A DNA stretch of 64,000 bases. Source: Obrimoposthia wandeli. Taxonomy: Eukaryota. The stretch is taken from the NCBI GenBank assembly GCA_977020255.1, contig CDROCS010003167.1, positions 1 to 64,000 of the forward strand. The letters are read 5' to 3'. The notes under the pieces were generated by a model that was given only the letters and a program-made list of their open reading frames with translations, was not told where the DNA came from and did no database searches. Below, one piece after another: positions 34,551 to 61,758 of this stretch; positions within the stretch are counted from its first letter, which is position 1, and each line of letters starts with the position of its first letter. The position numbers and the translations under genes were made by a program.

Positions 34551-34598
34551 TTTTAATTTTTAATTTTTAATTTTTAATTTTTAATTTTTAATTTTTAA
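34550..34598. repeat. (TTTTTAA)7 microsatellite spanning the adhesin A stop and adhesin B start
   Basis: Seven perfect 7-bp units. Confidence 0.95.
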
Positions 34599-38530: not shown

Positions 38531-39022
38531 CTATTCGCTTATCGTTGATATAGCGCACTCAATCGCACGTCTAATGACTATGTTTTTTTCGCTTACGCGG
38601 TTTGTTGCATCGGTAATCTTAAATTCCTCAACCGTGCTCCAGTTGCCATAAACAACCGCAATGTAAACAGTTCCTACTACCGAGTCTGAGTTTGTTGGAT
38701 CTACTCGAGATAGACTTCCTGTAATTCCAACTGAAACAGATGCTCTAACTGACTTCGCTATTCCAGCGTGCGCCATATCGAAGGCTGTTTGGATTGAGTA
38801 CACGCCAAACTCATCGATGGTTCCTTGCTTTACGCCAAGCGCAATCTTTGCATCATTCGAGTAGGTTACGAAGGCATCAAGCATGACTTCGCTCGCACCA
38901 GATACATTTGTTATGCAGTTGGCCATACCGCCACCAGTGCACGACTCGACAGTGGTAATGATTAATTCTTTTTCTTTTAGTAGTGCGACAAGTTTTTCAG
39001 ATAATGCAGTCAGTGTTGGCAT
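38531..39022 (-). CDS. pncC: NMN amidohydrolase (CinA C-terminal / PncC family)
   Basis: ESCTGG, GAS......VTYSNDAKI.LGV, SITG and GTVYIAV motifs. Confidence 0.85.
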   Translation of the reverse strand: MPTLTALSEKLVALLKEKELIITTVESCTGGGMANCITNVSGASEVMLDAFVTYSNDAKIALGVKQGTIDEFGVYSIQTAFDMAHAGIAKSVRASVSVGITGSLSRVDPTNSDSVVGTVYIAVVYGNWSTVEEFKITDATNRVSEKNIVIRRAIECAISTISE

Positions 39023-41788: not shown

Positions 41789-42682
41789 CTACCGTGGCGG
41801 TAAGAACTTATCTTTGATTGTTCTCACTATCCATCCAGCACTTTGGCTGTAAGTTAGTTTTACGTTCTTGTCGTCAATAGGCCATTTACCATTTAACTGG
41901 TACATATCAACCATCGTTTGGTAAAGATCACTCGCATTATCCTTGATAGGCTTTAAATACCGAAGGAACTTAACAGGAATGCCAAATCTAGCTTCAGCGA
42001 TGGCGCAAGCGATGCAAGCTATCGTGTCAGTATCGCCACCAATATATAGAGCCATTCCAATGGCCTCATCAAAGCTTCTACAAGTCAGGCCTATGAAAAT
42101 AGCTTGTGGTACAGTTTTATCAGCTAATGCAGTGAACCTGTAATTCCTATGCAGCTCGTTTATATCAAAGCTGAGGTTATAGTACTCACACTCTATTCGA
42201 TGCCTAACATCTTTTGGATCTCTACCTTGTAGACAAAGATATATAGCCAATGCAGTTGCCTCCGCAGACTTGAGCCCGCTAGGAGTATTGTGTGTCGCCA
42301 CAGCGCTGGAATGAGTAAGCATTAGCAACTCTGACTCAGTTCTGGCCATAAATGCAATAGGAGCAACTCGCATTGCAGCACCATTGCCTTCCGATTTATA
42401 CGGAATAGTACCATTGCTCATCGCCCACCGCGCAAACCGAGGTCCGTAACCTATGTTAATACCGTGACCATTGCTATAGAGGTCTTTATAACGATGAAAA
42501 TGGCTAAGATAGGACTCGCTAAAGGAGCGGTTAGTTAGCATTGCATGAGCTGTTGCGCAAGTTAGTACGGAATCATCAGTAAATGATGAGCTGTTATGAA
42601 TGTATCGTTTTAAGAAAAATCCTTTCTCGTCTCTGAATTCGTAATGTGAACCACAGATATCACCTATTATCGAGCCTAACAT
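41789..42682 (-). CDS. ADP-ribosylglycohydrolase (DraG/ARH family)
   Basis: IIGDICG, FTDDSVLT, GNGAAMRVAP, GGDTDTIACIA. Confidence 0.92.
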   Translation of the reverse strand: MLGSIIGDICGSHYEFRDEKGFFLKRYIHNSSSFTDDSVLTCATAHAMLTNRSFSESYLSHFHRYKDLYSNGHGINIGYGPRFARWAMSNGTIPYKSEGNGAAMRVAPIAFMARTESELLMLTHSSAVATHNTPSGLKSAEATALAIYLCLQGRDPKDVRHRIECEYYNLSFDINELHRNYRFTALADKTVPQAIFIGLTCRSFDEAIGMALYIGGDTDTIACIACAIAEARFGIPVKFLRYLKPIKDNASDLYQTMVDMYQLNGKWPIDDKNVKLTYSQSAGWIVRTIKDKFLPPR

Positions 42683-42769: not shown

Positions 42770-43444
42770 TTAAAAAGTGAACACGTAATTAACACCGCCA
42801 AACACCTTGTTGAACGCTGATATGCGCCCATGGCGATTGCCTTTCTCGTCAACGCCGCCAATCTGAAAAGGTTGAACAATCTTATCAACTTCTGCGCGAG
42901 CGATTTCCGAGTCCCAAGAAATAATACTTGTGTTGTATCCATCTTTCTTAACAGAGAACTTCGCACCATTAAACGCCATCTTTAACGCCTTTCGGATATT
43001 CTTGTTGATCGATGCAGAATCGTGAGTATTACGCTTAAATTGCTCTAGATGTGCGTATTCTGCACTTACCTTGAGTGCTGCAACTTCTGCATCAAACGCT
43101 ATCGACTCAGCTGTTCTTTTTGCATCAAGACTTGCGCTATACTTCTCCGCGTTCTGGATTAATATTTCGATATCAGAGTCAGGTATTATGTCTTGCGCAT
43201 TAACCACTCCGTAACTAAGACCTGCACGCAACAAGCTTTCCGAGTACTCACCAGATGAACCATTCTCGAAAACGATATGAACATGACCACCAGAGGCTGA
43301 CACTTTCGCGTTACCTACTATCATGCTGTATCCGTTCTTGTTGCAGCGTTCGTCAACCGATGTGATAACGCCTGCGCCTGTGCCGTAAAGCGCTTGGTGG
43401 ACTTGTTGTCCGCGAATTAAAGTAGAAGAGAAATTCTTAATCAT
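42770..43444 (-). CDS. LPD29-like (polyvalent-protein-associated) domain protein
   Basis: KNIRKALKMAFNGAKFSVK...SIISW...FGGVNYVF. The track start is 43477, but ATG 43444 has the AAGGTG RBS. Confidence 0.65.
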   Translation of the reverse strand: MIKNFSSTLIRGQQVHQALYGTGAGVITSVDERCNKNGYSMIVGNAKVSASGGHVHIVFENGSSGEYSESLLRAGLSYGVVNAQDIIPDSDIEILIQNAEKYSASLDAKRTAESIAFDAEVAALKVSAEYAHLEQFKRNTHDSASINKNIRKALKMAFNGAKFSVKKDGYNTSIISWDSEIARAEVDKIVQPFQIGGVDEKGNRHGRISAFNKVFGGVNYVFTF

Positions 43445-43466
43445 CTGTAACACCTTGACCATTCTA

Positions 43467-43538
43467 GGAAACACCACGTTTCCAACCTGAGATCTATTAT
43501 AATGACTTCCAAGTGATAATCAAGGGTTTTCAAAAACA
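43467..43538 (-). promoter_or_regulatory. shared promoter element with GTGGT-loop hairpin
   Basis: TGTTTTTGAAAAC-cc-TTGATT-16bp-TATAAT..TCAGGTT-GGAAAC-GTGGT-GTTTCC. Confidence 0.85.
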
Positions 43539-49072: not shown

Positions 49073-50803
49073 ATGTTAATACATAATAAGCTACCGAGGA
49101 AGGGTTTTACTATGCTGGAGTTGATGCTAGCAATCTCTGTATTCGTTACATCGCAAACACTCCGCTTATCAAACGAAGTTCAGCTAAAGAAGCATGATGA
49201 TGCTGAGGCGTTCGGTGAGATGATGTACTCAGCTATGTCAGCAATAGATAAGCGGCATTCGTTAGATGGCTATATAGGGCTTTCAGATTGGAATGCATCA
49301 TGGAGTAATACACAATCAGTACTAGACTCACTCTTTAGTCAAGAGCTCGTTGGCAGTAAAAATAAGATATGCGGAGATCAAAATGGGTGGACGCCTAAAG
49401 ATCCAGATAGTAACGGGTTTTTAGCCTTGCTTCCTTGCCATACATTCCCAAACAACGCCGTAGACATCCCTATGTCGCTAAAGGCTTACGCATTACGAAA
49501 AGGGACAATTGATGATCCGACCATGATCGAGGGGTGGAGTGTGTCAATTTACAATGATGATGTTAAAGATGTTGCTAAGTACGCAAAATTTTACCAAGAC
49601 ATCATAAGGGGGTTTAACAAGAGGAACAATTTAGCGATGACAGGGGATATAACAGCCTCAATTGTAGACCAAGCAACCTCAGAGAAAAGAAACCCATCTC
49701 AGTGTATGGCCGGTGTAAGCTGTGTTATTAAATTTGACTACACCCCATTCCTAACCTCTACTGACCGCTACACCTACCTACGAGGTGATGGTGAGAATGA
49801 TATGGAGGCAAGTCTCCAGTTTCACGTCCAAAATAAACCAGCTCAATGCCTTGATGATGCTGGGGTAAAAGTGGCCTGCGGACTAGATTATGATGGTACG
49901 ACTGTAAACCTCTACGGTACAAGTATCTCTATCTCTGAGCTATCCCTTACTACATCAAAAGATGTGGTCGGTGTACTGTGTCGGGATGAGAGTAACAACC
50001 CTGTAAACTGTGGGTTTTCGTTTACATCAAATGCCGGTGTAAGAAGACTGCAGTCCGCGTTTAAAGGCGGGGTTGTTGATGGAACTCTAGAAGTTATAGA
50101 CCCAAGCCTTCCCACTGTTAGCAGCCGTATGCTAGAGGTCACAAAAACAGGTAATGTGAATGCGACTAAGCTGGAAGCTGAGCAAATCACAGCTGGTGGA
50201 AATGTTAATATAGCTGAAACCCTTGATATTCAAGGGAACCTAATAAATGATCCAAGCCATAGCGAATCAAATATTTTTGTTTCGGAGACAATGAATGTAG
50301 GTAGAATCAAATCAGGAGCTTATAAGTTTAAAGGTAAGGTTGCTATAGGTGATCGATGTACAGGTTCTGATATTACAGCTGAAGATCCTGCATACGGGGG
50401 TAAAATATTGAGTTGCGTAAATGGTCTTTGGCAAATACCTAACGCTGTGCCACAGGGGGCTATAGTAGGATTTCTTAGCAACAAATGCCCGTTAGGCTGG
50501 ACTCCGGATGTAGCGCTAAATAGCTCTGGAGAAGCCGTGGTATCTGGTCCAGTAGCAATGAATGAGCAGAAAGTTGGGGTTCCTAATGGCCAAGCAAGGA
50601 TGACTGTGGATACTATGCCTGCGCATAACCATACATACTTAAGAGGTGAACGTGGGAGAGGTATTAGCTCTGGTGGTGGTGCGCAATTATTTAATCCCGG
50701 AGCAGCCCAAGAGATTACCAGTGGTGTCGCTGGTCACGCAATCCCAGATTCTTTTAATATCGAACCGGGGTTTATGAGTTTAATGTACTGTACGAAACTA
50801 TAA
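49073..50803 (+). CDS. PilV-like prepilin adhesin A' (paralogue of 34588-36285)
   Basis: PRKG|FTMLE; RHSLDG; KILSCVNGLW; FLSNKCPLGW; TMPAHNH. Confidence 0.75.
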   Translation: MLIHNKLPRKGFTMLELMLAISVFVTSQTLRLSNEVQLKKHDDAEAFGEMMYSAMSAIDKRHSLDGYIGLSDWNASWSNTQSVLDSLFSQELVGSKNKICGDQNGWTPKDPDSNGFLALLPCHTFPNNAVDIPMSLKAYALRKGTIDDPTMIEGWSVSIYNDDVKDVAKYAKFYQDIIRGFNKRNNLAMTGDITASIVDQATSEKRNPSQCMAGVSCVIKFDYTPFLTSTDRYTYLRGDGENDMEASLQFHVQNKPAQCLDDAGVKVACGLDYDGTTVNLYGTSISISELSLTTSKDVVGVLCRDESNNPVNCGFSFTSNAGVRRLQSAFKGGVVDGTLEVIDPSLPTVSSRMLEVTKTGNVNATKLEAEQITAGGNVNIAETLDIQGNLINDPSHSESNIFVSETMNVGRIKSGAYKFKGKVAIGDRCTGSDITAEDPAYGGKILSCVNGLWQIPNAVPQGAIVGFLSNKCPLGWTPDVALNSSGEAVVSGPVAMNEQKVGVPNGQARMTVDTMPAHNHTYLRGERGRGISSGGGAQLFNPGAAQEITSGVAGHAIPDSFNIEPGFMSLMYCTKL

Positions 50804-50810
50804 AAAAATT

Positions 50811-52472
50811 ATGAAAAAGAGCGGATTTATATTGCTGGACGCAATAATGGCCTCGGCACTCATATCAATAAGTGTTTTGGCAATAGCGAACTTAAACAAA
50901 CAGGAAGACTTCAGTGAGGACTCGCTACTGGCTGGTAAAGAACTTGCTCAATTACTTCACGCCGTAGACAAAAGGGTCCTCCTAGATGGCAGGGCGAACG
51001 TGGATTGGAATTCAGCTGAAGCTGGTGTCTTGGTCGCCGAGGAACTTAGGGGGAACCTAATCGGTAACGGTAATGTACGCTGCCCCGGGACATGGGATCC
51101 AAAAGTTAAAGGGAATGATGATATGGCATTGGTTGATTGTGACTTTTGGTCTAACCCCCCTATGGGTTCATATTCTGAACTCGATGTTAAATCAAGAAAT
51201 GGATTGAAAGAGTGGCGATTGGATATATATGATCCAAGGCCAAACTATCAAGATGCACTTATGCTTTCAGCTTCAGATATTATTAAATCAGCAGAACTTC
51301 ATTCAGTCCTTCAAATGACAGGTTTATATCAATATAGTGTGGTGGATCGTGGGGCAGACTCAACAGTATCACCATCAGAGTGCCTTAAGGGGGGGCTTGA
51401 TTGCGCAATAAGAGCAGAGTTAGTATTTCCTGAATCCTCTGTGAATTTAGATTCACTTTACAGAGTCGATGGTACTAATGGGATGGTAAAAGGCTTATTT
51501 TTCAGTATTAACACGAAGAGTGCTGCAGTCTGCTTTAACTCTCAAAGTGACCCTGTTGATTGTGGTTTGGACTTCGACCCATTGACGGAAGATCTAAATG
51601 TTACAATGAATAGAGTTAATGTGAGCAATATTCGCTTAGCAAGTAAGGCTGAGGGTGTTGCAGTTAGCTGTATCGATGAGGCTGGTAAGGCAAGCTTTTG
51701 TGGTATATCACCAATAAATACAGCGCAAAGTGAAGGTTTTGTTCAGGTAAACCATGTCGGCGTTAGTGGGGCTCTTAGTATAGTGAATACATCGGGTGAA
51801 GAGGTGTTTAGGGTCGACGAAAATGGTGTGGATTCAAAGGTTATTGAACTGGAAGGTAGCGTCACTGCCAAAAATGCATCAGTTAAAGATCTTGAACTCG
51901 CAGGTGATTTAACCACAAAAATAATGACTGCCCGATCAATAACATCTGAAGGGGTATTTTCAACGGAGCATCTAAAGGTTGACTCTGTACGTATGGGAGG
52001 AACTTGTGAGAAGGCATTAGCAGGTTCTATTACTACAAGTAGTGCAGGGAAGCTTGTCTCTTGTAGGGGTGGTCTCTGGTTGGAGCCGCCGCACCCAGCG
52101 GGTGGTGTGTTTTATACAAGAAGTAAAACTTGCCCAGCAGGGTTTAAGAGTGCGACAAATAGAAACTCCGTGGCAAGCCTATCTAAGGTTGGGTTTAGTT
52201 ATACACCTTCAGGAGGGGTGAGTGACTCGTCACGCGGGTCTGGTGTTGGCGGGGTCTATTCGGGTAATCATTTCGCTATAAACAAAACCCTACTACCTTC
52301 TCATTCGCATTCCTACCAAAGGTATACGTCTGATCGCCACACAAGAAAAAGTGGGAGTCGTAATGCCTCGTGGGGCGGCGAGTCGACGCAGACAACGACC
52401 GATACTGGAGGGAGTAAACCTATTGATATAACAGCACCGGGGATCATATTGACAATGTGCGTCACTATCTAA
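50811..52472 (+). CDS. PilV-like prepilin adhesin B' (paralogue of 32871-34550)
   Basis: MKKSG|FILLD; RVLLDGR; GKLVSCRGGLW; TCPAGF; LLPSHSH. Confidence 0.75.
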   Translation: MKKSGFILLDAIMASALISISVLAIANLNKQEDFSEDSLLAGKELAQLLHAVDKRVLLDGRANVDWNSAEAGVLVAEELRGNLIGNGNVRCPGTWDPKVKGNDDMALVDCDFWSNPPMGSYSELDVKSRNGLKEWRLDIYDPRPNYQDALMLSASDIIKSAELHSVLQMTGLYQYSVVDRGADSTVSPSECLKGGLDCAIRAELVFPESSVNLDSLYRVDGTNGMVKGLFFSINTKSAAVCFNSQSDPVDCGLDFDPLTEDLNVTMNRVNVSNIRLASKAEGVAVSCIDEAGKASFCGISPINTAQSEGFVQVNHVGVSGALSIVNTSGEEVFRVDENGVDSKVIELEGSVTAKNASVKDLELAGDLTTKIMTARSITSEGVFSTEHLKVDSVRMGGTCEKALAGSITTSSAGKLVSCRGGLWLEPPHPAGGVFYTRSKTCPAGFKSATNRNSVASLSKVGFSYTPSGGVSDSSRGSGVGGVYSGNHFAINKTLLPSHSHSYQRYTSDRHTRKSGSRNASWGGESTQTTTDTGGSKPIDITAPGIILTMCVTI

Positions 52473-52583
52473 TTACATATCAGTTAAGTTATTTTTCTCG
52501 CTAAAACATGTCCTAATTGGATATGTTTTTTTTTAATACTTAAACAGTTGGTGCATATCATATATAGTTAAATAAAATTAAAA

Positions 52584-54278
52584 ATGATTAAACATAACAA
52601 GGGTTTCTTTATGGCCGAGGCTGTTTTTGTTGCAACTATTATCGCATCCACCGTAGTGGGTAAAGCGAAAATGGATGAATACATTGACCAACAAAATGAC
52701 GCAACAGCCCTAGGTGTGCAACTGACAAGTACATTATCCGCAATAGATAAGCGTATATTTTTGGATGGCTACTACAGCTCAACAGTGTGGGACAAGGTCT
52801 ACCCTGACGCTATATCACTAAGTAATGATTTGTTTAAAAAGGAATTAATAGCGAAGAACAACCCCACTTGCGGGGATGCTTTTGGTGGGTGGGCACCGAG
52901 CATTAGCGTAAACGATGAGCTAGCACTGCTACCTTGTGGTTTTTTTAACCCTACCCTAATCCCTCTAGGTTTTGAAATTAGTGGCTTCAGGAAAGGCGAT
53001 AATGCTGAAGTTACTAAAATCGGATCTTGGGGGCTTGAGTTACATCATAGTGACCCAGATAAGTTTAGTAAATATTTCAAAAGCTACTCCCGCATAATAA
53101 ATACTATCAAACAGAGAAAGGGTGTGCGGATTACAGGGGATTTTAGCGCGTACTTAGTTCAAGTGGGTACAGATAGTAAAATCGATTACCTGAAGTGTGA
53201 GGCTCTTTCTACAAATTGTGCAATTAGAGTTGAGTACACACCTCATGCCGATTCAGCTTTTAGCGCTGAGAATATACGGGTTGATGGTTCAGCATATCTA
53301 CGCAAAGACTTATCTTTTCGAACTGGTTCAACCAAGGCGGAATGCTTTAAAATGGATGGGTTAAATCAGGTTGTAACCAATTGTGGGATCGAAGTCGATG
53401 GGGCTAGTGTAAATGCTAATGTGATGACCTTGACAGTCGAATCACTGATAGCGGCAGCTGATGGAGGGGCTCCGACAGACAGCTTATGTCAGGGCAAGGA
53501 TGGTGCTTTAACATCTTGTGGGATCTCAGTGTTATCTACAAACTCTTCAGTGTACAGCCAGTTACTCACAGGCACACTCTACTTGGAGGATCAGTTAAAG
53601 GTGTATTCAGATAGAGACGGTGCGGACCCTAAAAAGGATGTGGTTCTATCTGTTGATAAAAAGGGAGATGTGTCTATAAAATATAACCTTGGAGTGGAAA
53701 GTGATATAACAACCTCCGGTTCGCTAAAGGCTACAAATGGCGTGAATACGACTAACTTAAATATTGGTAAGGACGCTTGGATTACTGGTGATGCAGTAGC
53801 AGAGGCTCTTGGTGGAGCCGTACCGCCTTTGGAAACGTTTGGTAAGCTGCCAAATAGTTGCGAGGGTAGCTCAATGACAACTAACTCATCAGGCACCATT
53901 TTTCAGTGCGTAAATTCTAACTGGTTGAAAGTTGACTACCCTTCTCAAGCAGTACTCCCTTTTAAGACAGCGTGCCCAGATGGATGGACCCCTTTGGTAA
54001 TTCCAGCGGGTTACAGAGTAAAAGCCACGGACGACCCGCGCAAGATTGGTCTGGTAACTAATAAGCCAATAACGACTAAGCTTACAGAGCGCAATATACC
54101 GGCTCATACGCATAAATGGGGGCGTTACAGTATGTCAAGTGCCAAGAGAAAGCACAAGAGTCCACGAAGAGTTAGACTTCGTGGTACTTTTAATACGACA
54201 CCAAATAACAATGTATCATCTTCAAGTGTTAATTTTAGATCTCAGACTATGGCTGTTAACTTCTGCAAGAAGGGATGA
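52584..54278 (+). CDS. PilV-like prepilin adhesin C' (paralogue of 31049-32803)
   Basis: HNKG|FFMAE; RIFLDGY; GTIFQCVNSNW; LPFKTACPDGW; NIPAHTH; ends FCKKG. Confidence 0.75.
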   Translation: MIKHNKGFFMAEAVFVATIIASTVVGKAKMDEYIDQQNDATALGVQLTSTLSAIDKRIFLDGYYSSTVWDKVYPDAISLSNDLFKKELIAKNNPTCGDAFGGWAPSISVNDELALLPCGFFNPTLIPLGFEISGFRKGDNAEVTKIGSWGLELHHSDPDKFSKYFKSYSRIINTIKQRKGVRITGDFSAYLVQVGTDSKIDYLKCEALSTNCAIRVEYTPHADSAFSAENIRVDGSAYLRKDLSFRTGSTKAECFKMDGLNQVVTNCGIEVDGASVNANVMTLTVESLIAAADGGAPTDSLCQGKDGALTSCGISVLSTNSSVYSQLLTGTLYLEDQLKVYSDRDGADPKKDVVLSVDKKGDVSIKYNLGVESDITTSGSLKATNGVNTTNLNIGKDAWITGDAVAEALGGAVPPLETFGKLPNSCEGSSMTTNSSGTIFQCVNSNWLKVDYPSQAVLPFKTACPDGWTPLVIPAGYRVKATDDPRKIGLVTNKPITTKLTERNIPAHTHKWGRYSMSSAKRKHKSPRRVRLRGTFNTTPNNNVSSSSVNFRSQTMAVNFCKKG

Positions 54279-55273: not shown

Positions 55274-55585
55274 CTAGCTGCTAGAAGTAAACTTCATAAT
55301 AAAGCAGTGCTGCTCGCAGTTATCCCACTCTTCCTCGTCAAAGTCATCCAGCCAAGCTTCCTTTGACCCATCAGGGATCGCCCCATTCATAGTCTTTATG
55401 ATGCTAAGGGTTGGAGCCTCAGAGTTTAAGAATAACTTTAGGTCTCGGTTAAAACTTGGCTCGATGGTCTGGATTGCAAATAGCTCCCCGTCGCGAGCGG
55501 TTTCAACGAATTTCATAACAGCCTGTCGTGCCAGACTCATAGCTGTTGGGCACCTGTGTGCCTGTAAATCTAATGCGTTCATCAC
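55274..55585 (-). CDS. TusA/SirA-like sulfur carrier protein
   Basis: LDLQAHRCPTAM matches the TusA LD..G..CP.P motif with the persulfide Cys; IEPSFNRDL resembles DDPATTRDI; GGAG RBS just after the upstream stop. Confidence 0.75.
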   Translation of the reverse strand: MMNALDLQAHRCPTAMSLARQAVMKFVETARDGELFAIQTIEPSFNRDLKLFLNSEAPTLSIIKTMNGAIPDGSKEAWLDDFDEEEWDNCEQHCFIMKFTSSS

Positions 55586-55592
55586 AAGCTCC

Positions 55593-56765
55593 TTAAGCCG
55601 TTAGTACTTTACAAGGCATAATGCGTAGCTTTCCACACAGGTATGAACCGATGCGCTTGTCTGATGCAGAAACGATGCCACCTTCCTCTTTCGTTATCTT
55701 TTCAATAACGAAGCTTTCATCTGACATATCAGTTAATGGAAGAGAACTTAATTTATCAAACGCGTCCATGTTAAACGCCCCAGTAACCAACGAGTCTTCA
55801 ATGGCTGAGCGAATTAGATAGCCGTAACCAGTCAGGAATAGCGCTTTTGTAAATAAAGCTTGTTTGTGTATCCCTTTTTTCTCTGTAAGCAATGAGTCTA
55901 GCGGTAACTTCTCAATCAGCATTGGGATTAAGTCCACCAGCAAACTATACGTTCTGTTGTAAACGCTATCATCAAGAAGGTCCTTCGTTAGCTCACCCTT
56001 TGTTGTGCCAAGCGAGCAGTGAATAAAACTTGCAAACTGAGAAAGCGTCCAAGCCTGATGACCTGTTACTTTACCCTTGGATGCAACCCATGAATGCATA
56101 GGTTTACCTTTGATCTCGATGTCCATAAGTTGGTTCATTAAACGACCGTAAGTCGTCGAGCTATCGAAGTACAAAGATATGGAAGCATTTGGTTTCATTA
56201 AAGAAATATGGTAATCACTAAAAGTTTGTCGAACAATTTTTTTCGCTTCATAAATCGTTTCTGTGTTTGTAATTACAAACTTAACTGAGATTGTATGGTT
56301 CGCGAAATCGTTTAGCTGGTCCAAGTCGATACCTTCAAGAGCCAGTACTCCACTTGCAGTTGTATGACGACCCTGCCCGTCAGTTATATGTCGGTCAGTA
56401 TCTTTACTTAGACATGCAACAACCATATCTCTGTTGCCCACCTTTACTGACTTTTCGATTGTTAATTTAGTTAAGAACACCGTAATGCTAGGGAAGATAC
56501 TCGCGCCCTTCTGAACATACTTAACCATCTTCTTCACACGGGGATCTTTTGGGCTGACGTCACGTTGAAGTTTTTCTGATTCATTGATGAAATCTGAATT
56601 TTTCTCACAACTGAAGTGATTAACAAACTCCTTCATAAGCATAATGCCTTCATAAGACTCGACACCTTCGTTAGCATAGTTAAAGCCTTCGTTACCAATA
56701 AACAAAGTAAGCATTAAGTCTTCGTTAAGTGGTGAAATCATTTTTCTGGTTTGTGCGCAAGTCAT
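55593..56765 (-). CDS. DndB/DGQHR-domain protein (variant DGQGR)
   Basis: LQRDVSP..RVKKMVKYV, IFPSITV, ITDGQGRHTT, RQTFSDYH. Confidence 0.75.
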   Translation of the reverse strand: MTCAQTRKMISPLNEDLMLTLFIGNEGFNYANEGVESYEGIMLMKEFVNHFSCEKNSDFINESEKLQRDVSPKDPRVKKMVKYVQKGASIFPSITVFLTKLTIEKSVKVGNRDMVVACLSKDTDRHITDGQGRHTTASGVLALEGIDLDQLNDFANHTISVKFVITNTETIYEAKKIVRQTFSDYHISLMKPNASISLYFDSSTTYGRLMNQLMDIEIKGKPMHSWVASKGKVTGHQAWTLSQFASFIHCSLGTTKGELTKDLLDDSVYNRTYSLLVDLIPMLIEKLPLDSLLTEKKGIHKQALFTKALFLTGYGYLIRSAIEDSLVTGAFNMDAFDKLSSLPLTDMSDESFVIEKITKEEGGIVSASDKRIGSYLCGKLRIMPCKVLTA

Positions 56766-56853
56766 ACGTCCGCCTTGTTATGAGTATTGTTAATTACGAT
56801 TAGTCGCTGTGAGCGTTTAGTTCGAGATCAATATACCCCAAATTAAAATAATG

Positions 56854-56991
56854 GCAATATGTATCACCAAAATAACAATAATAGATTTATTTAGGCCAAA
56901 TAGGACTCAGCGGAGGTCAGCATTTGAACAATAACGGCCATATGGACTACAAAGTCGGATTAAAACCGTTAATTTAAGCAATATGTATCAC
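56854..56991. promoter_or_regulatory. 14-bp direct repeat GCAATATGTATCAC in the divergent promoter region
   Basis: Exact copies at 56854-56867 and 56978-56991. Confidence 0.55.
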
Positions 56992-57004
56992 TTGTCGATT
57001 TTAT

Positions 57005-60000
57005 ATGTATAATGGCGGCATACAAACAAACAAGGTGAACGACATGGACTTACTTAATCAATTTGCAGCAGAACAACATATAGAAGTAAACAACATTCTG
57101 ATCAATGCTGTTGCAGATGATAACGCTCACCTTGTGGCTATACATGATGAGTTCCTTAATGTTGTCGCCGACGCTCAAGCGGTTATCGAACATCCAGCTG
57201 CAGCGGTGGTTCACGTAGGATTTAGTAGCGGCAAGGACAGTAATCTTGTTTTAATCGCGATTATGGAAGCTTACAGACGCTCTATTGCTAGTGGAGCTAT
57301 CGAACCTGAACGATTATTACTTGTCAGCACGATTGATACTCTAATTGAAGCTCTACCTATGCAATTCATGGTTGATTTTAGTAAGCACTACATTGCAAAA
57401 TTTGCAAAAAAACATAACATTAATCTTGTTCACACAATTACATCCCCGACGTTAAGTTCAGAGTACTTCGTCAAGTACGCCGGAGCAGATAAATTAGTAA
57501 ATAATCCAAGTAGAACAGGGGATTGCACGAATATCCTCAAGTTAGACCCGGCAATGAAAGTGCTTTCTATGCAGCGAAAAACAATCTTAGATGGCAAGCG
57601 AGTTATAAGCTGTACAGGTTCAAGAAATGAGGAAAGTCCTCGCCGTCTAATGAACATGAGAAAGCAAGGCGTAAGCAATAAAGCCGTTGACACAATTTTG
57701 ATGGAAATGAGCATGACAGAACTAAGCTCAACCATTAACTTCGCGCCGATACGAGACTGGCCGACCTCTGATGTGTTCGACTTCCTCCGTATCATCGGCA
57801 GTGATGCCTTATATAGCATTAGAGATCAGCGTGACCCTGTTGAATCATACTTCCCACACTTTGCCCTACTCCTTGAGATTTACGGCAAGGCTAGCAACGA
57901 AGCGTGCTCAATCACGGTTAATGTATCAGGTAAGACTGAGTCTAATGGTTGTGGTGGTAGCAGTGAGCGATACGGTTGTAATTTCTGCACCCGCATCATC
58001 ACAGATCGAAGCGCGATTAGTGTGTCACAAAAGCCATACTGGGATTTCCTCGGCACTACTGATGCCCTAAGAGTTCGCGACTGGCTTAGCCGCACAGCAT
58101 CAAATCCGGACGCAAGAACAATGCACCCAAAAGCTGTCGACCCAGTGTTTAACCGAATCATGTTCCAGAGTAATGTTTTGAAGCCCCGTTTTCTGGAGAA
58201 AATGGTAAAATATGCGAGTCAATTAACAGTTAACGCGATAGCTAAAGCGAGTGAATTTGACGACCTAATAAAGCAAGGTAGAGAGGCTGAGCATGAAGGT
58301 TATGCAGCGATTTTAAGTGATAACTCGATTCACCCGAAAGCTAAAGATCAGCTCCTTAAAATGTATAAATCTGGCGCTAGAAAGCCTTACATGCCCTACT
58401 TCAGCCTAAAACATGCAACTCTACTTTCTATGAAGTGGTCATTACTAGGTGTTAGCTCAGCACCGTATCGTCCTCTTAAGATCTGGGATGATGCAGTTAA
58501 AGGCAATGGCGTTATCCCATTCCCTAAATTAAACAGCGAGCTACCGAAGTCGGAATGGGAAATGAAGTCAACGCCAATGGTTGATCCAATTGTACTCCCT
58601 GTACACCCTGCTGAATTTGAAAAGACATTTTTTGAAGAAGGTAAACCTCTCCTGTCTTACTGGGAGAAGCCTTTTGATATTATGGATATGTACGATCATT
58701 CAAACTGCCGCAAAGCGAAGAAGCCGAAAGGAACGTACATGATCAAGGCTTTCTTCAGCGGAACGTTCAATGCTTGTGAAAATGGAATATCACTATCAGT
58801 CGATATAACGAAGGTCGCTGACGCAAAAACGGGTAAAGCTCTGGATTTTAACAATGAATGGGTTGCCAAGTCAGAAATTGAATCTCTACTTGAGAACAAG
58901 GTCTTTTCATACCTAATAGAAAACCATGGTGTGAACAGGTTTAGCGACCTAAGCTTCACAAACAAGCAGGACGCTGAAAAAGCCGCGAGAGAACTTACAT
59001 TATTAGTGAAAGATGTAGAAAGCGGTAACCTCTCAATCTGCTACCTAAATAAAAAGCCTTTATTTTCTGGGATAAAAAAAGAACCTGTAAAATCAATCCC
59101 GAAACGCAATGCGACAGAGCGCGTTAGATTGAGTGGTAAGTCAGGGAAAGTTGTGAAAACATCGACCAGATGTAAATTCTACACACCGAGCACTACACCT
59201 AACCTAGAATTAAAGGTCTGTAACTTCATCAATATGGCCGTAGTCGACTTCAACACAGAAGATGAAAGTACAATTTCAATTCGAGATTACTTTGATGAAA
59301 TACCGAGTGAAATCGAGCCTATTATGTTCAACGAATTAGAGCATCTAAACTGGCTAGACTACGGTGGCTACGAAAAAGCAATCCAACTCCACGATGAGTT
59401 TGTTGAAAGCAAAATTAAGTATCGCCATCTGCAAGACATGCCGCGTGTTCGCCGATACTCAGGTAGTGAGCCAATTTCCCGATTAATGAATGAATCAGGG
59501 CTTATGATTGAACCGAGTTACAAGAAACAGTTCGAAAAAACACTCAAGCGAACACATCTACTAAAAGAGTGCGGAGCATTTGATTTGCAAGCGTTGTCGT
59601 TTGATGATCTTACGGCATACAAAGGTACTATAAGCATGGAACAGCACCGCAGTGATAAGGCAGCTTACCTACTCAAGGTACGTGCAAAGAAAAACGAACA
59701 ACGCCGTGATATTAAAAATCTTGCAGCTAAAGCCAAGACAGACCTACCGTCTTTCGTAGTTGATGTGGCCACTAAAATTCAAAGCGATCTTTTTGCAAAC
59801 GCTATGAGTTACATTGATTACCTAGACGGCATGGCAATCGACTCTGATGGGTTTGTATCGGGCTCAGGTGTTGATTGTGAGGTACCAATGAAGACACAGA
59901 TAAAGGCGTTCAAAACTTGGTTCAACTTTTACGGCGCGGCACTATCAAGCTATGATGAATTTAAAAAGGTCTTCCTCGGCCAAGATTACAACAAGGCTCT

Positions 60001-60343
60001 GTCTTGTAATAGATTCTCTGACTTAGCAATTAGCCGAGCTCATAACAAACTACAGATTAAGCTAGAAAAAGCTGTAGCGACCTGCTCTCATGAGTTAACT
60101 GTTGATTTAAGCAATATGGACCAGAAATCTGTTGAGAAAAATATCGTCAGCAACATGAGCACAAATGATAAAGTAAGCGCTATGAGTGATATGATTCGGG
60201 CGGCTAAAAAAAATAATTCAAGCGGTATGGATAAAAAAGCAGCTAAGATAAACATTGATAGAAAAACTGTCACTAACATGAGTGCAAGTGATAAAGTAAG
60301 CGCTATGAGTAACGTTCTACAAAATTTAAAGAAGGCATCGTAA
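57005..60343 (+). CDS. giant DndC-like PAPS-reductase-family (PP-loop, Fe-S) protein with long C-terminal extension
   Basis: FSSGKDS, DTLIE, CTNILKLDP, GSRNEESPRR, APIRDWPTSDVFDFL, EAC, GCGGSSERYGCNFCT. The start may be ATG 57044. Confidence 0.8.
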   Translation: MYNGGIQTNKVNDMDLLNQFAAEQHIEVNNILINAVADDNAHLVAIHDEFLNVVADAQAVIEHPAAAVVHVGFSSGKDSNLVLIAIMEAYRRSIASGAIEPERLLLVSTIDTLIEALPMQFMVDFSKHYIAKFAKKHNINLVHTITSPTLSSEYFVKYAGADKLVNNPSRTGDCTNILKLDPAMKVLSMQRKTILDGKRVISCTGSRNEESPRRLMNMRKQGVSNKAVDTILMEMSMTELSSTINFAPIRDWPTSDVFDFLRIIGSDALYSIRDQRDPVESYFPHFALLLEIYGKASNEACSITVNVSGKTESNGCGGSSERYGCNFCTRIITDRSAISVSQKPYWDFLGTTDALRVRDWLSRTASNPDARTMHPKAVDPVFNRIMFQSNVLKPRFLEKMVKYASQLTVNAIAKASEFDDLIKQGREAEHEGYAAILSDNSIHPKAKDQLLKMYKSGARKPYMPYFSLKHATLLSMKWSLLGVSSAPYRPLKIWDDAVKGNGVIPFPKLNSELPKSEWEMKSTPMVDPIVLPVHPAEFEKTFFEEGKPLLSYWEKPFDIMDMYDHSNCRKAKKPKGTYMIKAFFSGTFNACENGISLSVDITKVADAKTGKALDFNNEWVAKSEIESLLENKVFSYLIENHGVNRFSDLSFTNKQDAEKAARELTLLVKDVESGNLSICYLNKKPLFSGIKKEPVKSIPKRNATERVRLSGKSGKVVKTSTRCKFYTPSTTPNLELKVCNFINMAVVDFNTEDESTISIRDYFDEIPSEIEPIMFNELEHLNWLDYGGYEKAIQLHDEFVESKIKYRHLQDMPRVRRYSGSEPISRLMNESGLMIEPSYKKQFEKTLKRTHLLKECGAFDLQALSFDDLTAYKGTISMEQHRSDKAAYLLKVRAKKNEQRRDIKNLAAKAKTDLPSFVVDVATKIQSDLFANAMSYIDYLDGMAIDSDGFVSGSGVDCEVPMKTQIKAFKTWFNFYGAALSSYDEFKKVFLGQDYNKALSCNRFSDLAISRAHNKLQIKLEKAVATCSHELTVDLSNMDQKSVEKNIVSNMSTNDKVSAMSDMIRAAKKNNSSGMDKKAAKINIDRKTVTNMSASDKVSAMSNVLQNLKKAS

Positions 60344-60346
60344 GTC

Positions 60347-60859
60347 ATGACAGAGCAAGCAGAGCAACACTACCAACCGTTTAAACTGGTTACAGCGGAC
60401 AAGGTCTCTGGAAAGACCAAGGTCGCAATGTCGACGTTGCGGAAGTGGACAAAATCAAGACCGGACAGGATCCGACTCTTAGAGTTCTCGGTGTTCTTCG
60501 GTTTATTTGACAGTGAGCTTACACCGGCTCTGTTTGATAAGGACCTAACTCTTTACAACGCAATCAAGATTTGCTGTGGAGATGATATAAAGGTTCAGGA
60601 CATCTCGCGGTTAATAGGTGTGCCAGCAAAAACATTTAATAGCTGGTGGGTAGGAGAAGACAGTAAGCGGACGCTTGCCGTCTCAATGGTATTGGCTTCT
60701 GCTGCCCTGCTATTTATAGGCTCTAAGGCGCGTACAGGCTCTTACTGGTCATCAACCGACATAGAGGTTGAACTATCTAATAAGGCGGAGGTAAACGCCC
60801 TGCTAACAAGTGAAGTTGCTACAATTACGTTCCATCATTGGATGGATTCAAAGAACTGA
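60347..60859 (+). CDS. probable DNA-binding protein with two HTH-like segments
   Basis: VAMSTLRKW and ISRLIGVPAKTFNSW; starts 3 bp after the DndC-like stop. Confidence 0.6.
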   Translation: MTEQAEQHYQPFKLVTADKVSGKTKVAMSTLRKWTKSRPDRIRLLEFSVFFGLFDSELTPALFDKDLTLYNAIKICCGDDIKVQDISRLIGVPAKTFNSWWVGEDSKRTLAVSMVLASAALLFIGSKARTGSYWSSTDIEVELSNKAEVNALLTSEVATITFHHWMDSKN

Positions 60860-61758
60860 TGACTTATCCAATTAGTTATCCGGTAGTAATCCAGTCTAGA
60901 GCAGCGTTTGTAGCCGAGTTAGCTGAGTGCGAAAGTGGTCGGCATGAGGATGCAGAGACCGCTCGAACCGATGGTGACTTGGAGCTTATTGCGGACTGCG
61001 GATATGAGTGTGTTGTTAATGACTTCCTATTCCGCCATAACGCAAAGATTGAGTTGCGAAGTCAGGCTGAGCTCGATGAGCTTCATTACGCGCTAACTTC
61101 CGGCACAATTGGAATGTACAAAGAGCGCGCAACAGATCTTATGATTGCTAAGCTAGATAACTTAATTCTAACTGGATGCCAGACAGCGCCAAAGACCACA
61201 AATAAGGTTGGCAAGGTTGATGATGTAACAGCCAAGCAAATTATTGGAATGTTTGGCCATGCAGTTAATGAGCAGCTAAGTCAGGCTGCTCATATCTTCG
61301 TTGTTAATCCTATACCAGATGCCGCGTTCAGTAAGATGGTTATCAAATACAGCAAGTCAAGAAGCGTAACCACCTCGACAGCCGAGATTGTGAATGGCAT
61401 ACCTTCTTTGAAATTTGCGATAGCAGATATTGTTGATGGTCATCACGCAGGTAAAACTAGTTTCCAATATGACGAATATGACTCCATCAAGAACCATCGC
61501 TTAATCGGCTCATGCACAGGCGATATAAACGTTTACATTTCCTGCCTTGTTAGTCATGAGTTGGCTCATATAATTCAGGACTCGATCTTCTTATCAGCGC
61601 AGAGAAGTAAGGATACTTGGAATGGAATAGAGGTATCAACGCTTGAGAAACCACATGGTCAAGGATGGCGAGAAATATACTCGCGCCTGAGGCTAAATCT
61701 AGCAAATAAGCTACCAACTTACCAATCCATAACGGCGACTAAATCAGGTAACCTGTAG
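60838..61758 (+). CDS. SprT-like zinc metalloprotease
   Basis: LVSHELAHIIQ plus PHGQGWREIY; TGATG overlap gives a likely start at 60859. Confidence 0.75.
   Translation: MDGFKELMTYPISYPVVIQSRAAFVAELAECESGRHEDAETARTDGDLELIADCGYECVVNDFLFRHNAKIELRSQAELDELHYALTSGTIGMYKERATDLMIAKLDNLILTGCQTAPKTTNKVGKVDDVTAKQIIGMFGHAVNEQLSQAAHIFVVNPIPDAAFSKMVIKYSKSRSVTTSTAEIVNGIPSLKFAIADIVDGHHAGKTSFQYDEYDSIKNHRLIGSCTGDINVYISCLVSHELAHIIQDSIFLSAQRSKDTWNGIEVSTLEKPHGQGWREIYSRLRLNLANKLPTYQSITATKSGNL

What the first reader, a model, noticed from the sequence alone, without database searches (positions are those of the whole stretch)
55274..61758. Non-canonical sulfur-modification module: TusA-like carrier and DndB-like regulator divergent from a giant DndC-like enzyme operon
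Seen: on the minus strand, a DGQHR/DndB-type protein (DGQGR variant) ends 7 bp before a TusA-like protein with an intact CP motif. On the plus strand, a 1112-aa protein keeps the ordered DndC-type motifs (SGKDS PP-loop, DTLIE, CT..LK.DP, GSR.EES.RR, PI.DW...DV, and a Cys set ending in GCxxC), followed by tightly coupled HTH and SprT genes. Established: DndC and SspD are PAPS-reductase-family Fe-S ATP pyrophosphatases that install DNA phosphorothioate using sulfur from DndA/IscS. DndB is the DGQHR repressor of dnd operons. TusA takes persulfide from IscS for tRNA thiolation and is not a known Dnd/Ssp component. No dndD, dndE, sspB/C or cysteine desulfurase gene is in the window. Inference: a plasmid-borne, stripped-down sulfur-writing system fed by host IscS through its own TusA. 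It could phosphorothioate incoming plasmid DNA to escape Dnd/Ssp restriction, or thiolate a base as TtcA/TtuA-type enzymes do.
Basis: partly seen in the sequence, partly recalled or inferred. Interest (0 to 1): 0.9.

Follow-up and report, generated by a model that had tools for sequence, protein, structure and literature searches.

The report
Plasmid sulfur-relay module around giant DndC-like enzyme
This DNA carries a conserved gene set of unknown function, found mainly on plasmids of marine bacteria, in which a small sulfur-carrier protein and a DndB-like protein sit beside a giant enzyme related to the one that puts sulfur into the DNA backbone; it probably marks DNA with sulfur without the usual helper genes, but that has not been tested.

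Summary
On the minus strand, a 390-aa DGQHR/DndB-type gene (motif DGQGR) ends 7 bp before a 103-aa TusA-like gene. Both are divergent from a 1112-aa protein. Its residues ~54-341 match canonical DndC profile-to-sequence (99.65% probability), PP-loop and all five DndC cysteines aligned.

The trio is a conserved module:
- Of 15 related loci with upstream sequence, 14 have the TusA-like gene adjacent or fused, and 12 have an intact DGQHR gene.
- In Alteromonas plasmids, and in four further clusters at 50% identity, a TusA domain that passes Pfam's cut-off is fused to the enzyme's N-terminus.

No dndD, dndE, ssp or cysteine desulfurase gene was detected in the window or annotated on a complete related conjugative plasmid.

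The enzyme's C-terminal 570 residues are conserved but match no known fold. The downstream HTH-like gene is semi-conserved. The "SprT" gene is unique to this window.

Shorter relatives, without TusA or DGQHR partners, are backbone genes of IncC, IncHI1 and Pseudomonas megaplasmids.

Best reading: a TusA-fed, DndC-type sulfur writer that acts alone, most likely making DNA phosphorothioate. Both the chemistry and the biological role are inferred. It is a new variant of a known kind, of moderately high interest.

The parts
55274..55585 (-). TusA-like sulfur-carrier gene (103 aa). It has invariant RCP (Cys12) and IEP motifs and an acidic tail, with pI 4.5.
   Evidence: The ORF is. NCBIfam TusA gives E 0.044. 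A profile of 10 orthologues finds only E. coli TusA structures in the PDB, with the active-site Cys aligned. The L009 orthologue hits Pfam TusA at E 1.5e-4. Fused orthologues pass Pfam TusA's gathering cut-off. The gene is present or fused at 14 of 15 related loci.
55593..56765 (-). DGQHR-domain (DndB-like, ParB/Srx-type) protein of 390 aa, with the motif variant DGQGR.
   Evidence: TIGR03187 scores 65.6 bits against a cut-off of 58.85, and Pfam DndB scores 48.7 against 29.1. Alignment with 10 orthologues and a canonical DndB shows invariant QR, DGQ.R and F.D. The gene is intact at 12 of 15 related loci.
56766..57004 (.). Divergent control region. An exact 14-nt direct repeat, GCAATATGTATCAC, lies at 56854-56867 and 56978-56991 and is a candidate operator.
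   Evidence: These are the only two copies in the 64-kb window, even when 2 mismatches are allowed. Promoter-like hexamers overlap the first copy. A GCAATAT core recurs in the same intergenic region of L001 (as a 16-nt perfect palindrome) and of L009, but not of the closest relative L018. Its role as an operator is inferred.
57005..58639 (+). Giant enzyme, conserved core (residues about 1-545): DndC-type PP-loop ATP pyrophosphatase domain, Cys cluster (C174, C301, C316, C325, C328) and a helical domain.
   Evidence: Pfam PAPS_reduct is above its cut-off, and DndC and PRK06850 HMM hits have E 1e-18 to 1e-22. hhalign against a canonical DndC gives 99.65% probability over residues 54-341, with the PP-loop and all five Cys aligned. 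These residues are invariant in 15 homologues. The fold matches APS/PAPS reductase, NcsA and TtuA. The roughly 520-aa core is shared with the IncC 817-aa protein and with 450-545-aa AFDB clusters.
58640..60343 (+). Giant enzyme, clade-specific C-terminal extension (residues 546-1112). It is a beta-rich segment followed by long helices, is net basic, and ends in a duplicated tail motif NMS..DKVSAMS.
   Evidence: It is conserved in homologues, with invariant C568, R706, Y726, W783, H796, R849, T850, H881, R882, K885 and R900. The models have pLDDT 72-78. No significant fold match was found in the PDB, and AFDB clusters return only uncharacterised relatives. The tail has pI 10.1. Its function is unknown.
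60347..60859 (+). 170-aa protein with a weak HTH signature, a semi-conserved fourth gene of the module.
   Evidence: It starts 3 nt after the giant gene's stop. Pfam HTH_26 and HTH_66 give E 0.02-0.03, below cut-off. Homologues lie directly downstream of the giant gene in L009, L011, L001, L010, L014 and L018, and weakly in L013. The language-model search gives HTH leads only.
60838..61758 (+). 306-aa protein with an HExxH motif, a possible SprT/WLM-like zincin. It is an accessory neighbour, not part of the conserved module.
   Evidence: The ORF and the HELAH motif are. There is no Pfam or NCBIfam family hit. The Atlas feature search scores 0.93 to phage clusters, one of them 77% SprT-like. 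No homologue was found at any of the related loci.

Best explanation
This is a self-contained sulfur-relay module of mobile elements, built on a DndC-type enzyme.

Proposed mechanism:
1. The small TusA-like protein takes a persulfide on its invariant Cys12, presumably from the host's housekeeping cysteine desulfurase IscS, since none is encoded nearby.
2. It passes the sulfur to the Cys/Fe-S centre of the giant enzyme.
3. The enzyme's DndC-type PP-loop domain uses ATP to activate its nucleic-acid target and substitutes sulfur. The most likely product is a phosphorothioate in the DNA backbone.
4. The conserved 570-residue C-terminal extension is proposed to replace the target-handling roles that DndD/DndE, SspBC or BrxC play in known systems.
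5. The DGQHR/DndB-like protein, transcribed divergently, is proposed to regulate the divergent promoter or restrain the enzyme. It is dispensable in some lineages.

The module has no conserved restriction partner and sits on conjugative or large plasmids. Its most likely role is therefore to mark or protect the element's own DNA, as an orphan modification or anti-restriction function.

Shown here: the gene content, the homology, the conserved catalytic motifs, the co-occurrence and the gene fusions.
Inferred: the sulfur source, the substrate, the product and the biological role.
For: - **DndC-type core.** The PP-loop and all five DndC cysteines align with a canonical DndC (hhalign 99.65% probability, E 4e-25) and are invariant in 15 homologues. 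Only DndC models hit in PADLOC, with no SspD or BrxP hits. According to PMC10853773 and PMC12839542, a cysteine dyad in addition to the three Fe-S ligands is specific to DndC and is missing in BrxP and in the subset of SspD that shares its arrangement.
- **Sulfur carrier.** The TusA-like gene is adjacent at 13 related loci and fused to the enzyme at one more, 14 of 15 in all. Four independent clusters at 50% identity carry an N-terminal Pfam TusA domain above the gathering cut-off, as does L002. The RCP cysteine is invariant and aligns to the TusA active site in 1dcj and 3lvj.
- **DNA-linked partner.** The DGQHR protein passes the curated cut-offs, and jackhmmer links it to a canonical DndB.
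- **No canonical partners.** None was found in 55 window ORFs or in the annotation of a complete related MOBH plasmid.
- **Precedent for a lone writer.** tdpC alone suffices for phosphorothioate synthesis (PMC12914056, citing An et al. 2025).
- **Neighbours.** The flanking genes vary and are typical of defence or anti-defence islands, with no shared restriction gene.
Against: - There is no chemical evidence of any modification.
- The enzyme scores far below the DndC equivalog cut-off (67 against 290 bits), and similarity stops at about residue 341 of 1112.
- In Dnd, Ssp and BREX type 4, phosphorothioate synthesis needs an NTPase partner (PMC12914056). None is recognisable here, unless the ParB/Srx-type DGQHR protein serves that role.
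- Canonical Dnd does not use TusA (PMC3519819). TusA's classical clients are tRNA thiolation and molybdenum cofactor synthesis, so the carrier fits base thiolation equally well.
- The closest solved folds include the tRNA thiolases NcsA and TtuA.
- The window's own small protein does not reach any TusA cut-off.
- The DGQHR histidine is replaced by Gly or Asn in this clade.
- The relatives on IncC and IncHI1 plasmids lack both partner genes.
Confidence: 0.5

Rival explanations
1. The enzyme thiolates a base rather than the backbone. The target would be tRNA/rRNA or DNA, as in the [4Fe-4S] PP-loop thiolases TtcA, TtuA and NcsA, with the TusA-like protein as the persulfide donor.
For: TusA's established clients are thiolation pathways. 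Foldseek's top PDB hits for the N-terminal domain include NcsA (6scy) and TtuA (5mkq, 5b4f) alongside APS/PAPS reductases. All of these enzymes use a PP-loop plus an Fe-S centre, which is also present here.
Against: No TtcA, TtuA or MnmA HMM hit appeared at E<=0.1, whereas the DndC models hit at 1e-18 to 1e-22. The full DndC-specific cysteine pattern aligns. The conserved partner is a DndB-type protein, a family associated with DNA modification. The fold hits have weak E-values (about 3e-3) and cover only the generic PP-loop fold.
Confidence: 0.17
2. The module is the modification half, or the whole, of a defence system. It would mark self-DNA, while the C-terminal extension, the ParB/Srx-type DGQHR protein or a variable neighbour acts as the effector against unmarked invaders. 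On this reading it is not an anti-restriction device of the plasmid.
For: All characterised phosphorothioate writers (Dnd, Ssp, Tdp, BREX type 4) belong to restriction-type defence systems (PMC12914056). ParB/Srx domains can be NTP-regulated nickases (PMC5512222). The neighbourhoods include defence genes: CBASS-like genes in L011, AAA plus DUF4435 plus PLD in L014, and SNF2 in L016.
Against: No restriction-type gene is shared between loci. No nuclease or NTPase domain is recognisable in the C-terminal extension. The DGQHR gene is missing or truncated in 3 of 15 loci that keep the TusA-like and giant genes.
Confidence: 0.15
3. The proteins do something other than sulfur insertion. One option is an IbrA/IbrB-like regulatory pair, a DndC-like protein with a ParB-like protein that co-activates gene expression. 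Another is a different adenylation-dependent DNA transaction, with the TusA-like domain serving as a binding module.
For: The best NCBIfam hit is PRK06850, a family of uncharacterised DndC-like proteins (80.5 bits). From my own knowledge, not verified here, IbrA is a DndC-like protein paired with a ParB-like IbrB. [quoted passage not shown] More than half of the giant protein has an unknown fold.
Against: The invariant PP-loop, the five invariant cysteines and an invariant carrier cysteine kept across separate and fused forms are hard to explain without sulfur chemistry. PRK06850 is matched far below its cut-off (80.5 against 536).
Confidence: 0.1
4. It is simply part of a canonical Dnd or Ssp system, and the missing genes (dndD, dndE or sspBC, and a desulfurase) lie elsewhere on the same replicon, outside the 64-kb window.
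For: Only 64 kb of the replicon can be seen. dndA is often unlinked or replaced by iscS (PMC12914056).
Against: A complete related plasmid that carries the module has no annotated DndD, DndE, Ssp or desulfurase gene anywhere. The enzyme is 2-2.5 times the size of DndC, with a clade-specific extension, and fails the DndC equivalog cut-off. The dedicated TusA is foreign to Dnd. None of the 15 other giant-enzyme loci shows a dndD or dndE neighbour.
Confidence: 0.05

Closest known systems
DndBCDE(A) DNA phosphorothioation system
   Same: The enzyme has a DndC-type PP-loop (SSGKDS) and the full DndC cysteine set, three Fe-S ligands plus a dyad, all aligned to a canonical DndC. It is paired with a DGQHR/DndB-family protein. 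It probably relies on a host IscS-type desulfurase, as many dnd clusters do.
   Different: There is no DndD ATPase and no DndE. The enzyme has 1112 aa against about 450-500, with a 570-aa extension of unknown fold. It scores 67 bits against the 290-bit equivalog cut-off. The DndB-like gene is divergent rather than first in the operon and reads DGQGR. A dedicated TusA-like carrier is present, whereas tusA is dispensable for Dnd (PMC3519819).
TdpABC system (TdpC as a single-gene phosphorothioate writer)
   Same: It sets the precedent that one PAPS-reductase-family enzyme can make DNA phosphorothioate without DndD/E-type partners. The reaction goes through an adenylated intermediate according to the title of An et al. 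2025, as cited in PMC12914056.
   Different: Tdp is described from extremophiles and comes with the restriction genes tdpAB. No TdpC sequence was available here, so homology was not tested. No TusA partner or giant C-terminal extension is known to me for TdpC.
TusA-IscS sulfur relay of E. coli (tRNA 2-thiouridine, molybdenum cofactor)
   Same: The small protein shares the TusA fold signature and the active-site Cys-Pro motif. The only PDB sequence hits are TusA (1dcj) and TusA in the IscS-TusA complex (3lvj). Fused orthologues pass Pfam TusA.
   Different: The downstream acceptor is a DndC-like enzyme, not TusBCD/TusE/MnmA. The protein carries an extra acidic C-terminal tail. The second Pro of CPxP is not conserved. 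The window's copy does not reach a TusA family cut-off on its own.
SspABCD and BREX type 4 (BrxP/BrxC) phosphorothioation
   Same: These are also PAPS-reductase-family sulfur writers in non-Dnd architectures. BrxP is likewise a large fusion protein, SspD-like plus DUF4007 (PMC12914056).
   Different: No SspD or BrxP model hit was found in PADLOC. BrxP, and the subset of SspD with the same arrangement, lack the DndC cysteine dyad (PMC12839542), which is present here. No SspB, SspC or BrxC-type partner was found.
Large 'PAPS reductase family' backbone proteins of IncC, IncHI1 and Pseudomonas megaplasmids
   Same: They share a core of about 520 aa with the PP-loop and cysteines (hhalign E 7e-23 over residues 42-559). 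They occur on 2339 plasmid records, 1834 of them predicted conjugative. The function of these proteins is equally uncharacterised.
   Different: They are shorter (604-817 aa) with unrelated C-terminal tails. No TusA-like or DGQHR gene lies next to them.

Membership tests
DndC (TIGR03183 equivalog) | PP-loop ATP pyrophosphatase motif SGGKDS | tested here: met
   SSGKDS at residues 74-79 is invariant in 15 homologues and aligns to the SGGKDS of a canonical DndC.
DndC (TIGR03183 equivalog) | Cysteine set: three [4Fe-4S] ligands plus the DndC-specific dyad | tested here: met
   C174, C301, C316, C325 and C328 are invariant, and each aligns to a cysteine of a canonical DndC. The meaning of the dyad is taken from PMC10853773.
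DndC (TIGR03183 equivalog) | Score at or above the curated equivalog cut-off, with full-length similarity | tested here: not met
   The score is 67.1 bits against a cut-off of 290.4, and only model positions 18-259 of 447 are matched. hhalign covers DndC residues 15-268 of 493.
DndC (TIGR03183 equivalog) | Operon partners DndD (SMC-like ATPase) and DndE | tested here: not met
   No such family appeared among 55 window ORFs in NCBIfam or Pfam. None is annotated at the other giant-enzyme loci or on the complete plasmid NZ_CP033067.1. Caveat: window ORFs shorter than 120 aa outside 50-64 kb were not scanned.
DndC (TIGR03183 equivalog) | Produces Rp-phosphorothioate in DNA | not testable with these tools
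   This needs LC-MS/MS of digested DNA or an iodine-cleavage assay.
DGQHR domain / DndB | Matches the curated DGQHR and DndB models above cut-off | tested here: met
   TIGR03187 scores 65.6 against 58.85, and PF14072 scores 48.7 against 29.1. jackhmmer reaches a canonical DndB.
DGQHR domain / DndB | Signature motif D-G-Q-H-R | tested here: not met
   The motif is DGQGR here and DGQ(G/N)R throughout the clade. The canonical DndB in the same alignment has DGQHR. D, G, Q and R are invariant, and only the His is replaced.
DGQHR domain / DndB | Represses the dnd operon by binding its promoter | not testable with these tools
   Only a candidate operator, an exact 14-nt direct repeat, was found in the divergent promoter region.
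TusA (PF01206 / NF001423) | Family model matched above cut-off | tested here: inconclusive
   The window protein has no Pfam hit and NCBIfam TusA E 0.044 (13.6 bits against a cut-off of 78). The L009 orthologue scores 21.9 bits against 28.6. Fused orthologues score 30.3-37.7 bits, above the cut-off, and align with the window protein.
TusA (PF01206 / NF001423) | Conserved persulfide-accepting Cys in a Cys-Pro motif near the N-terminus | tested here: met
   R11-C12-P13 is invariant in 10 orthologues and aligns to the LRCPEP motif of E. coli TusA in 1dcj and 3lvj.
TusA (PF01206 / NF001423) | Accepts sulfur from IscS | not testable with these tools
   This needs an in vitro persulfide-transfer assay or iscS genetics.
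SspD / BrxP (Ssp and BREX type 4 writers) | Match to SspD or BrxP models, with SspB/SspC or BrxC partners | tested here: not met
   The PADLOC scan returned only DndC models. No partner families were found in the window.
IbrA-like (PRK06850) | Match to the family model above cut-off | tested here: not met
   The score is 80.5 bits against a cut-off of 536.
TtcA/TtuA/NcsA tRNA thiolases | Sequence-family match beyond the generic PP-loop fold | tested here: not met
   There are only weak structural hits to the PP-loop domain (E about 3e-3 to 3e-2) and no HMM hit at E<=0.1.
SprT-like zincin (the 306-aa neighbour) | HExxH motif plus a match to PF10263 | tested here: inconclusive
   HELAH is present. 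There is no Pfam hit at E<=0.1. The language-model search places it near phage clusters, one of them 77% SprT-like, at score 0.93, which is only a lead.

The most novel reading that the evidence does not exclude
The module is a fifth, minimal type of DNA phosphorothioation system. A single giant DndC-type enzyme, charged by its own TusA carrier, would write phosphorothioate without any DndD, SspC or BrxC-type NTPase. Conjugative plasmids would use it as an orphan, mobile modification that shields incoming plasmid DNA from host nucleases or phosphorothioate-dependent restriction. By extension, the uncharacterised 'PAPS reductase' backbone genes of IncC and IncHI resistance plasmids would have the same purpose.
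Probability: 0.3. Interest if true: 0.85.

Novelty: new variant of a known kind. Interest (0 to 1): 0.66.

Why it matters
Four DNA phosphorothioation systems are established (Dnd, Ssp, Tdp, BREX type 4), and all are host defence systems. This module would be a different architecture. It has a dedicated TusA-type sulfur carrier, genetically fused to the enzyme in some lineages. It has a DndC-type catalytic core with a large unexplained extension. It lacks the usual ATPase and DNA-handling partners, and it travels on plasmids without a restriction partner.

If it writes phosphorothioate, it would show that mobile elements use backbone sulfur as an orphan, protective mark. It would link the TusA relay to DNA modification for the first time. 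It would also offer a compact two-gene system for study.

It gives a testable lead for a long-ignored backbone gene present on more than 2,300 sequenced plasmids, among them the IncC and IncHI1 plasmids and the Pseudomonas megaplasmid examined here. The function of that gene is unknown.

Tried and rejected
- **Finding the source replicon.** Near-identity DNA searches of the locus and of 50 kb of the window against 72,556 plasmids found no match, so the replicon could not be identified.
- **Single-sequence search with canonical Dnd proteins.** phmmer with DndA-E from a Rhizobium plasmid against all window ORFs found nothing, not even DndC against the giant protein. The test is too insensitive, so I relied on HMM libraries instead.
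- **Fold of the C-terminal extension.** Foldseek against the PDB had a best E of 0.2. VIA-align wide gave only generic helical bundles at Z<=8. AFDB clusters returned only uncharacterised relatives, and the Atlas feature search peaked at 0.68. No assignment was possible.
- **Solved structures.** Sequence-profile searches of the PDB with the giant protein and the DGQHR protein gave no hits.
- **Other fusions.** The roughly 400-aa N-terminal extensions of two distant relatives (P0111, P0126) are not DGQHR domains. The N-terminus of P0072 is not detectably TusA.
- **TusA-like genes next to IncC and IncHI1 homologues.** None was found.
- **The 14-nt repeat as a conserved operator.** It is not conserved in the closest relative L018. 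Only a GCAATAT core recurs, in L001 and L009. I keep it as a low-confidence candidate.
- **Literature.** No paper in the searchable library links TusA with DndC-like enzymes or discusses the function of the plasmid PAPS-reductase genes. Maindola et al. 2014 and An et al. 2025 are not held.
- **Earlier scan notes.** Nothing was recorded near this window.
- **Genome-contig scan.** It returned only 4 loci. The plasmid collection and metagenome contigs supplied the rest.

Full report
**1. What is in the sequence**

- On the minus strand, a 390-aa ORF (55593-56765) ends 7 bp before a 103-aa ORF (55274-55585).
- On the plus strand, divergent across a 239-bp spacer, lies a 1112-aa ORF (57005-60343).
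- A 170-aa ORF (60347-60859) follows 3 nt later, and a 306-aa ORF (60838-61758) overlaps it.
- Homologues of the giant protein start at its Met14 (MDLL...), so the true start may be 39 nt downstream.
- Base composition is even across the window, at 38-44% G+C.

**2. Identities**

The 390-aa protein passes the curated cut-offs of the DGQHR domain model (TIGR03187, 65.6 against 58.85 bits) and of Pfam DndB (48.7 against 29.1). Its signature reads DGQGR. An alignment with ten orthologues and a canonical DndB shows that D, G, Q and R are invariant. The His is Gly or Asn throughout this clade.

The 1112-aa protein passes Pfam PAPS_reduct. It hits the DndC models (TIGR03183 E 1.4e-18; PADLOC DndC E 1e-21) and PRK06850 (E 1.1e-22), all far below the family cut-offs. 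No SspD, BrxP, TtcA or CysH model appears.

A profile of 15 homologues aligned to a canonical DndC, taken from an annotated dndBCDE-desulfurase cluster on a Rhizobium plasmid, gives 99.65% probability (E 4e-25) over residues 54-341. The following all fall on their DndC counterparts:
- the PP-loop SSGKDS;
- CT..LK..P;
- GSR.EES..R;
- API..W...DV;
- all five cysteines (C174, C301, C316, C325, C328).

These residues are invariant in the family. According to PMC10853773 and PMC12839542, DndC has three Fe-S cysteines plus a dyad. The dyad is absent from BrxP and from the subset of SspD that shares its arrangement. The core here is therefore of the DndC type.

The 103-aa protein is only marginally TusA-like by itself (NCBIfam E 0.044). 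A profile of ten orthologues finds only E. coli TusA in the PDB (1dcj, and the IscS-TusA complex 3lvj). The invariant Arg-Cys-Pro aligns on the active-site LRCPEP.

**3. The trio is a conserved module, and the TusA link is shown by gene fusion**

Protein searches of plasmids, genomes and metagenomes recovered 15 further loci with a giant homologue. Most are on large plasmids of Vibrio, Aliivibrio, Shewanella, Pseudoalteromonas, Alteromonas, Psychromonas and Rheinheimera. Some of these plasmids are typed MOBH/MPF_F conjugative.

Iterative HMM searches over all ORFs of these loci gave the following.

| Feature | Result |
|---|---|
| TusA-like gene | Next to the enzyme, or fused to it, in 14 of the 15 loci whose upstream side is present. 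The exception, L011, keeps only a 102-aa remnant of the DGQHR gene. |
| DGQHR gene | Intact in 12 of 15. It is absent from L008 and L019, which keep the TusA-like and giant genes. |
| Homologue of the 170-aa gene | Directly downstream in 7 of the other loci (one weak, one cut by the contig end). |
| 306-aa HExxH gene and upstream 198-aa ORF | Found nowhere else. |

In Alteromonas plasmid MRG65-300 the enzyme carries an N-terminal domain that passes Pfam TusA (35.7 against 28.6 bits). That plasmid also has a DndB gene just upstream.

An exhaustive phmmer search of 1.84 billion representatives found 466 relatives, 85 of them at E<=1e-30. Among these, four separate clusters at 50% identity also carry an N-terminal TusA domain above the Pfam cut-off.

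Recurrent fusion plus near-universal adjacency is strong comparative evidence that the carrier works with the enzyme.

**4. What is missing**

NCBIfam and Pfam scans of 55 window ORFs found no DndD, DndE, SspB, SspC, BrxC or class-V aminotransferase (cysteine desulfurase).

The complete 121-kb Pseudoalteromonas plasmid that carries the module has IncA/C- and SXT-like features: MobH relaxase, MobI(A/C) and bet/exo. It has no such gene annotated anywhere.

Neighbours of the module differ from locus to locus. They include toxin-antitoxin pairs, CBASS-like genes, methyltransferases, exonucleases and IS elements. No restriction partner is shared.

**5. The enzyme beyond the DndC core**

AlphaFold models have mean pLDDT 78 (whole protein) and 72 (residues 545-1112).
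- The N-terminal domain resembles APS/PAPS reductases and the Fe-S tRNA thiolases NcsA and TtuA.
- A core of about 520 residues is shared with 450-545-aa uncharacterised 'PAPS reductase' proteins and with the 817-aa IncC protein (residues 42-559).
- Residues 546-1112 are conserved within the clade, with invariant Arg, His, Tyr and Trp positions.
- This region is net basic and ends in a duplicated NMS..DKVSAMS tail.
- It matches nothing significant in the PDB or elsewhere.

**6. Control region**

The divergent spacer holds two exact copies of GCAATATGTATCAC, 124 bp apart. These are the only copies in the window. One overlaps a promoter-like site for the DGQHR gene, and the other lies 14 nt upstream of the giant ORF.

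A GCAATAT core recurs in the spacer of L001, inside a perfect 16-nt palindrome, and in that of L009. It does not recur in the closest relative L018. It is a low-confidence candidate operator.

**7. Interpretation**

The best-supported mechanism is a sulfur relay. A host desulfurase would charge the TusA-like Cys12. The carrier would then hand sulfur to the Cys/Fe-S centre of a DndC-type PP-loop enzyme, which activates its target with ATP and inserts sulfur.

Three points favour the DNA backbone as the target:
- the DndC-specific cysteine pattern;
- the exclusive DndC HMM hits;
- the DndB-family partner.

A lone writer has a precedent in tdpC (PMC12914056).

Several points weigh against certainty:
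- Dnd, Ssp and BREX type 4 need an NTPase partner.
- Canonical Dnd does not need TusA (PMC3519819).
- TusA's known clients are thiolation pathways.
- The enzyme fails every family cut-off.

I put DNA phosphorothioation by this module at about 0.5, base thiolation at about 0.17, a defence-type reading at about 0.15, a non-sulfur role at about 0.1, and a split canonical system at about 0.05.

The anti-restriction role is an inference. It rests on plasmid carriage and on the lack of a restriction partner.

**8. Relation to known systems and novelty**

The module works like a Dnd-type writer but is not a member of Dnd, Ssp, BREX type 4 or, as far as could be tested, Tdp. Defining features are not met: cut-offs, partners and motif details.

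No paper in the searchable library links TusA to DndC-like enzymes or assigns a function to the plasmid PAPS-reductase genes. Public annotation already labels the parts 'DGQHR domain protein', 'PAPS reductase family protein' and, for the fusion, 'sulfurtransferase TusA family protein'. The parts are therefore known, but the system is not.

I class it as a new variant of a known kind.

Distant, shorter relatives without the two partners occur on 2339 plasmid records, 1834 of them predicted conjugative. The ones examined were an IncC plasmid, IncHI1 pHCM1 and a Pseudomonas megaplasmid. This widens the relevance of any functional result.

**9. Limits**
- The window's replicon type is unknown.
- Small ORFs outside 50-64 kb were not scanned.
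- PLSDB gene tables are incomplete.
- All functional statements are inferences from sequence.

Noticed in passing
window 31049-36285 (-) and 49073-54278 (+); also 25519-26142 (+): Six paralogous proteins of about 553-584 aa form two inverted triplets. The copies seen have a type IV pilin-like N-terminal methylation motif and a C-terminal H.H motif, and the paralogues are 23-45% identical to the first copy. A master DNA invertase (Mpi-family serine recombinase) gene lies between the triplets. This may be a variable pilus-tip adhesin set, loosely like a shufflon, but no inversion sites were looked for.
   Followed up: partly
window 38531-39022 (-), 41789-42682 (-), 42770-43477 (-): Three genes sit within 5 kb: a CinA/PncC-type nicotinamide-nucleotide amidase, an ADP-ribosylglycohydrolase (DraG/Tri1-like), and a protein with an LPD29 domain (a 'large polyvalent protein' domain of conjugative elements). 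This combination is suggestive of an anti-defence region (NAD or ADP-ribosylation counter-measures).
   Followed up: no
window 12663-13982 (+): A HipA-family toxin kinase, with HipA_C and Couple_hipA domains well above cut-off. Its antitoxin partner was not examined.
   Followed up: no
window 26922-27695 (-) and 28361-29785 (-): A signal peptidase I / TraF-like S26 peptidase (also a weak hit to conjugative TraF_Ti) and an ATPase_2-type AAA protein. These are the only hints of conjugation or secretion functions in the window. No relaxase, replication or partition gene was detected.
   Followed up: no
window 60127-60343 (residues 1041-1112 of the giant protein): The enzyme ends in two copies of a short motif (NMSTNDKVSAMSDMI and NMSASDKVSAMSNVL) in a very basic tail with pI 10.1. 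One copy of an S.M....K...L..L tail is conserved at the C-terminus of most homologues. The partner TusA-like protein has a conserved acidic tail (W..FDEDD). This may be a docking pair or a secretion signal, and it was not tested.
   Followed up: partly
L004 (IncC pSTY1-1896), L002 (Alteromonas MRG65-300): In both the IncC plasmid and the Alteromonas plasmid, the DndC-like gene lies in the same neighbourhood as a DNA cytosine methyltransferase gene and a yfbR 5'-deoxynucleotidase gene. This hints at an old, shared 'DNA-marking' backbone block in MOBH-type plasmids.
   Followed up: no
P0111 and P0126 (distant relatives, 1019 and 1030 aa): In these proteins the PAPS-reductase domain sits after an N-terminal extension of about 400 aa with no Pfam match, and the extension is not DGQHR-like. 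This is another uncharacterised architecture in the family.
   Followed up: partly
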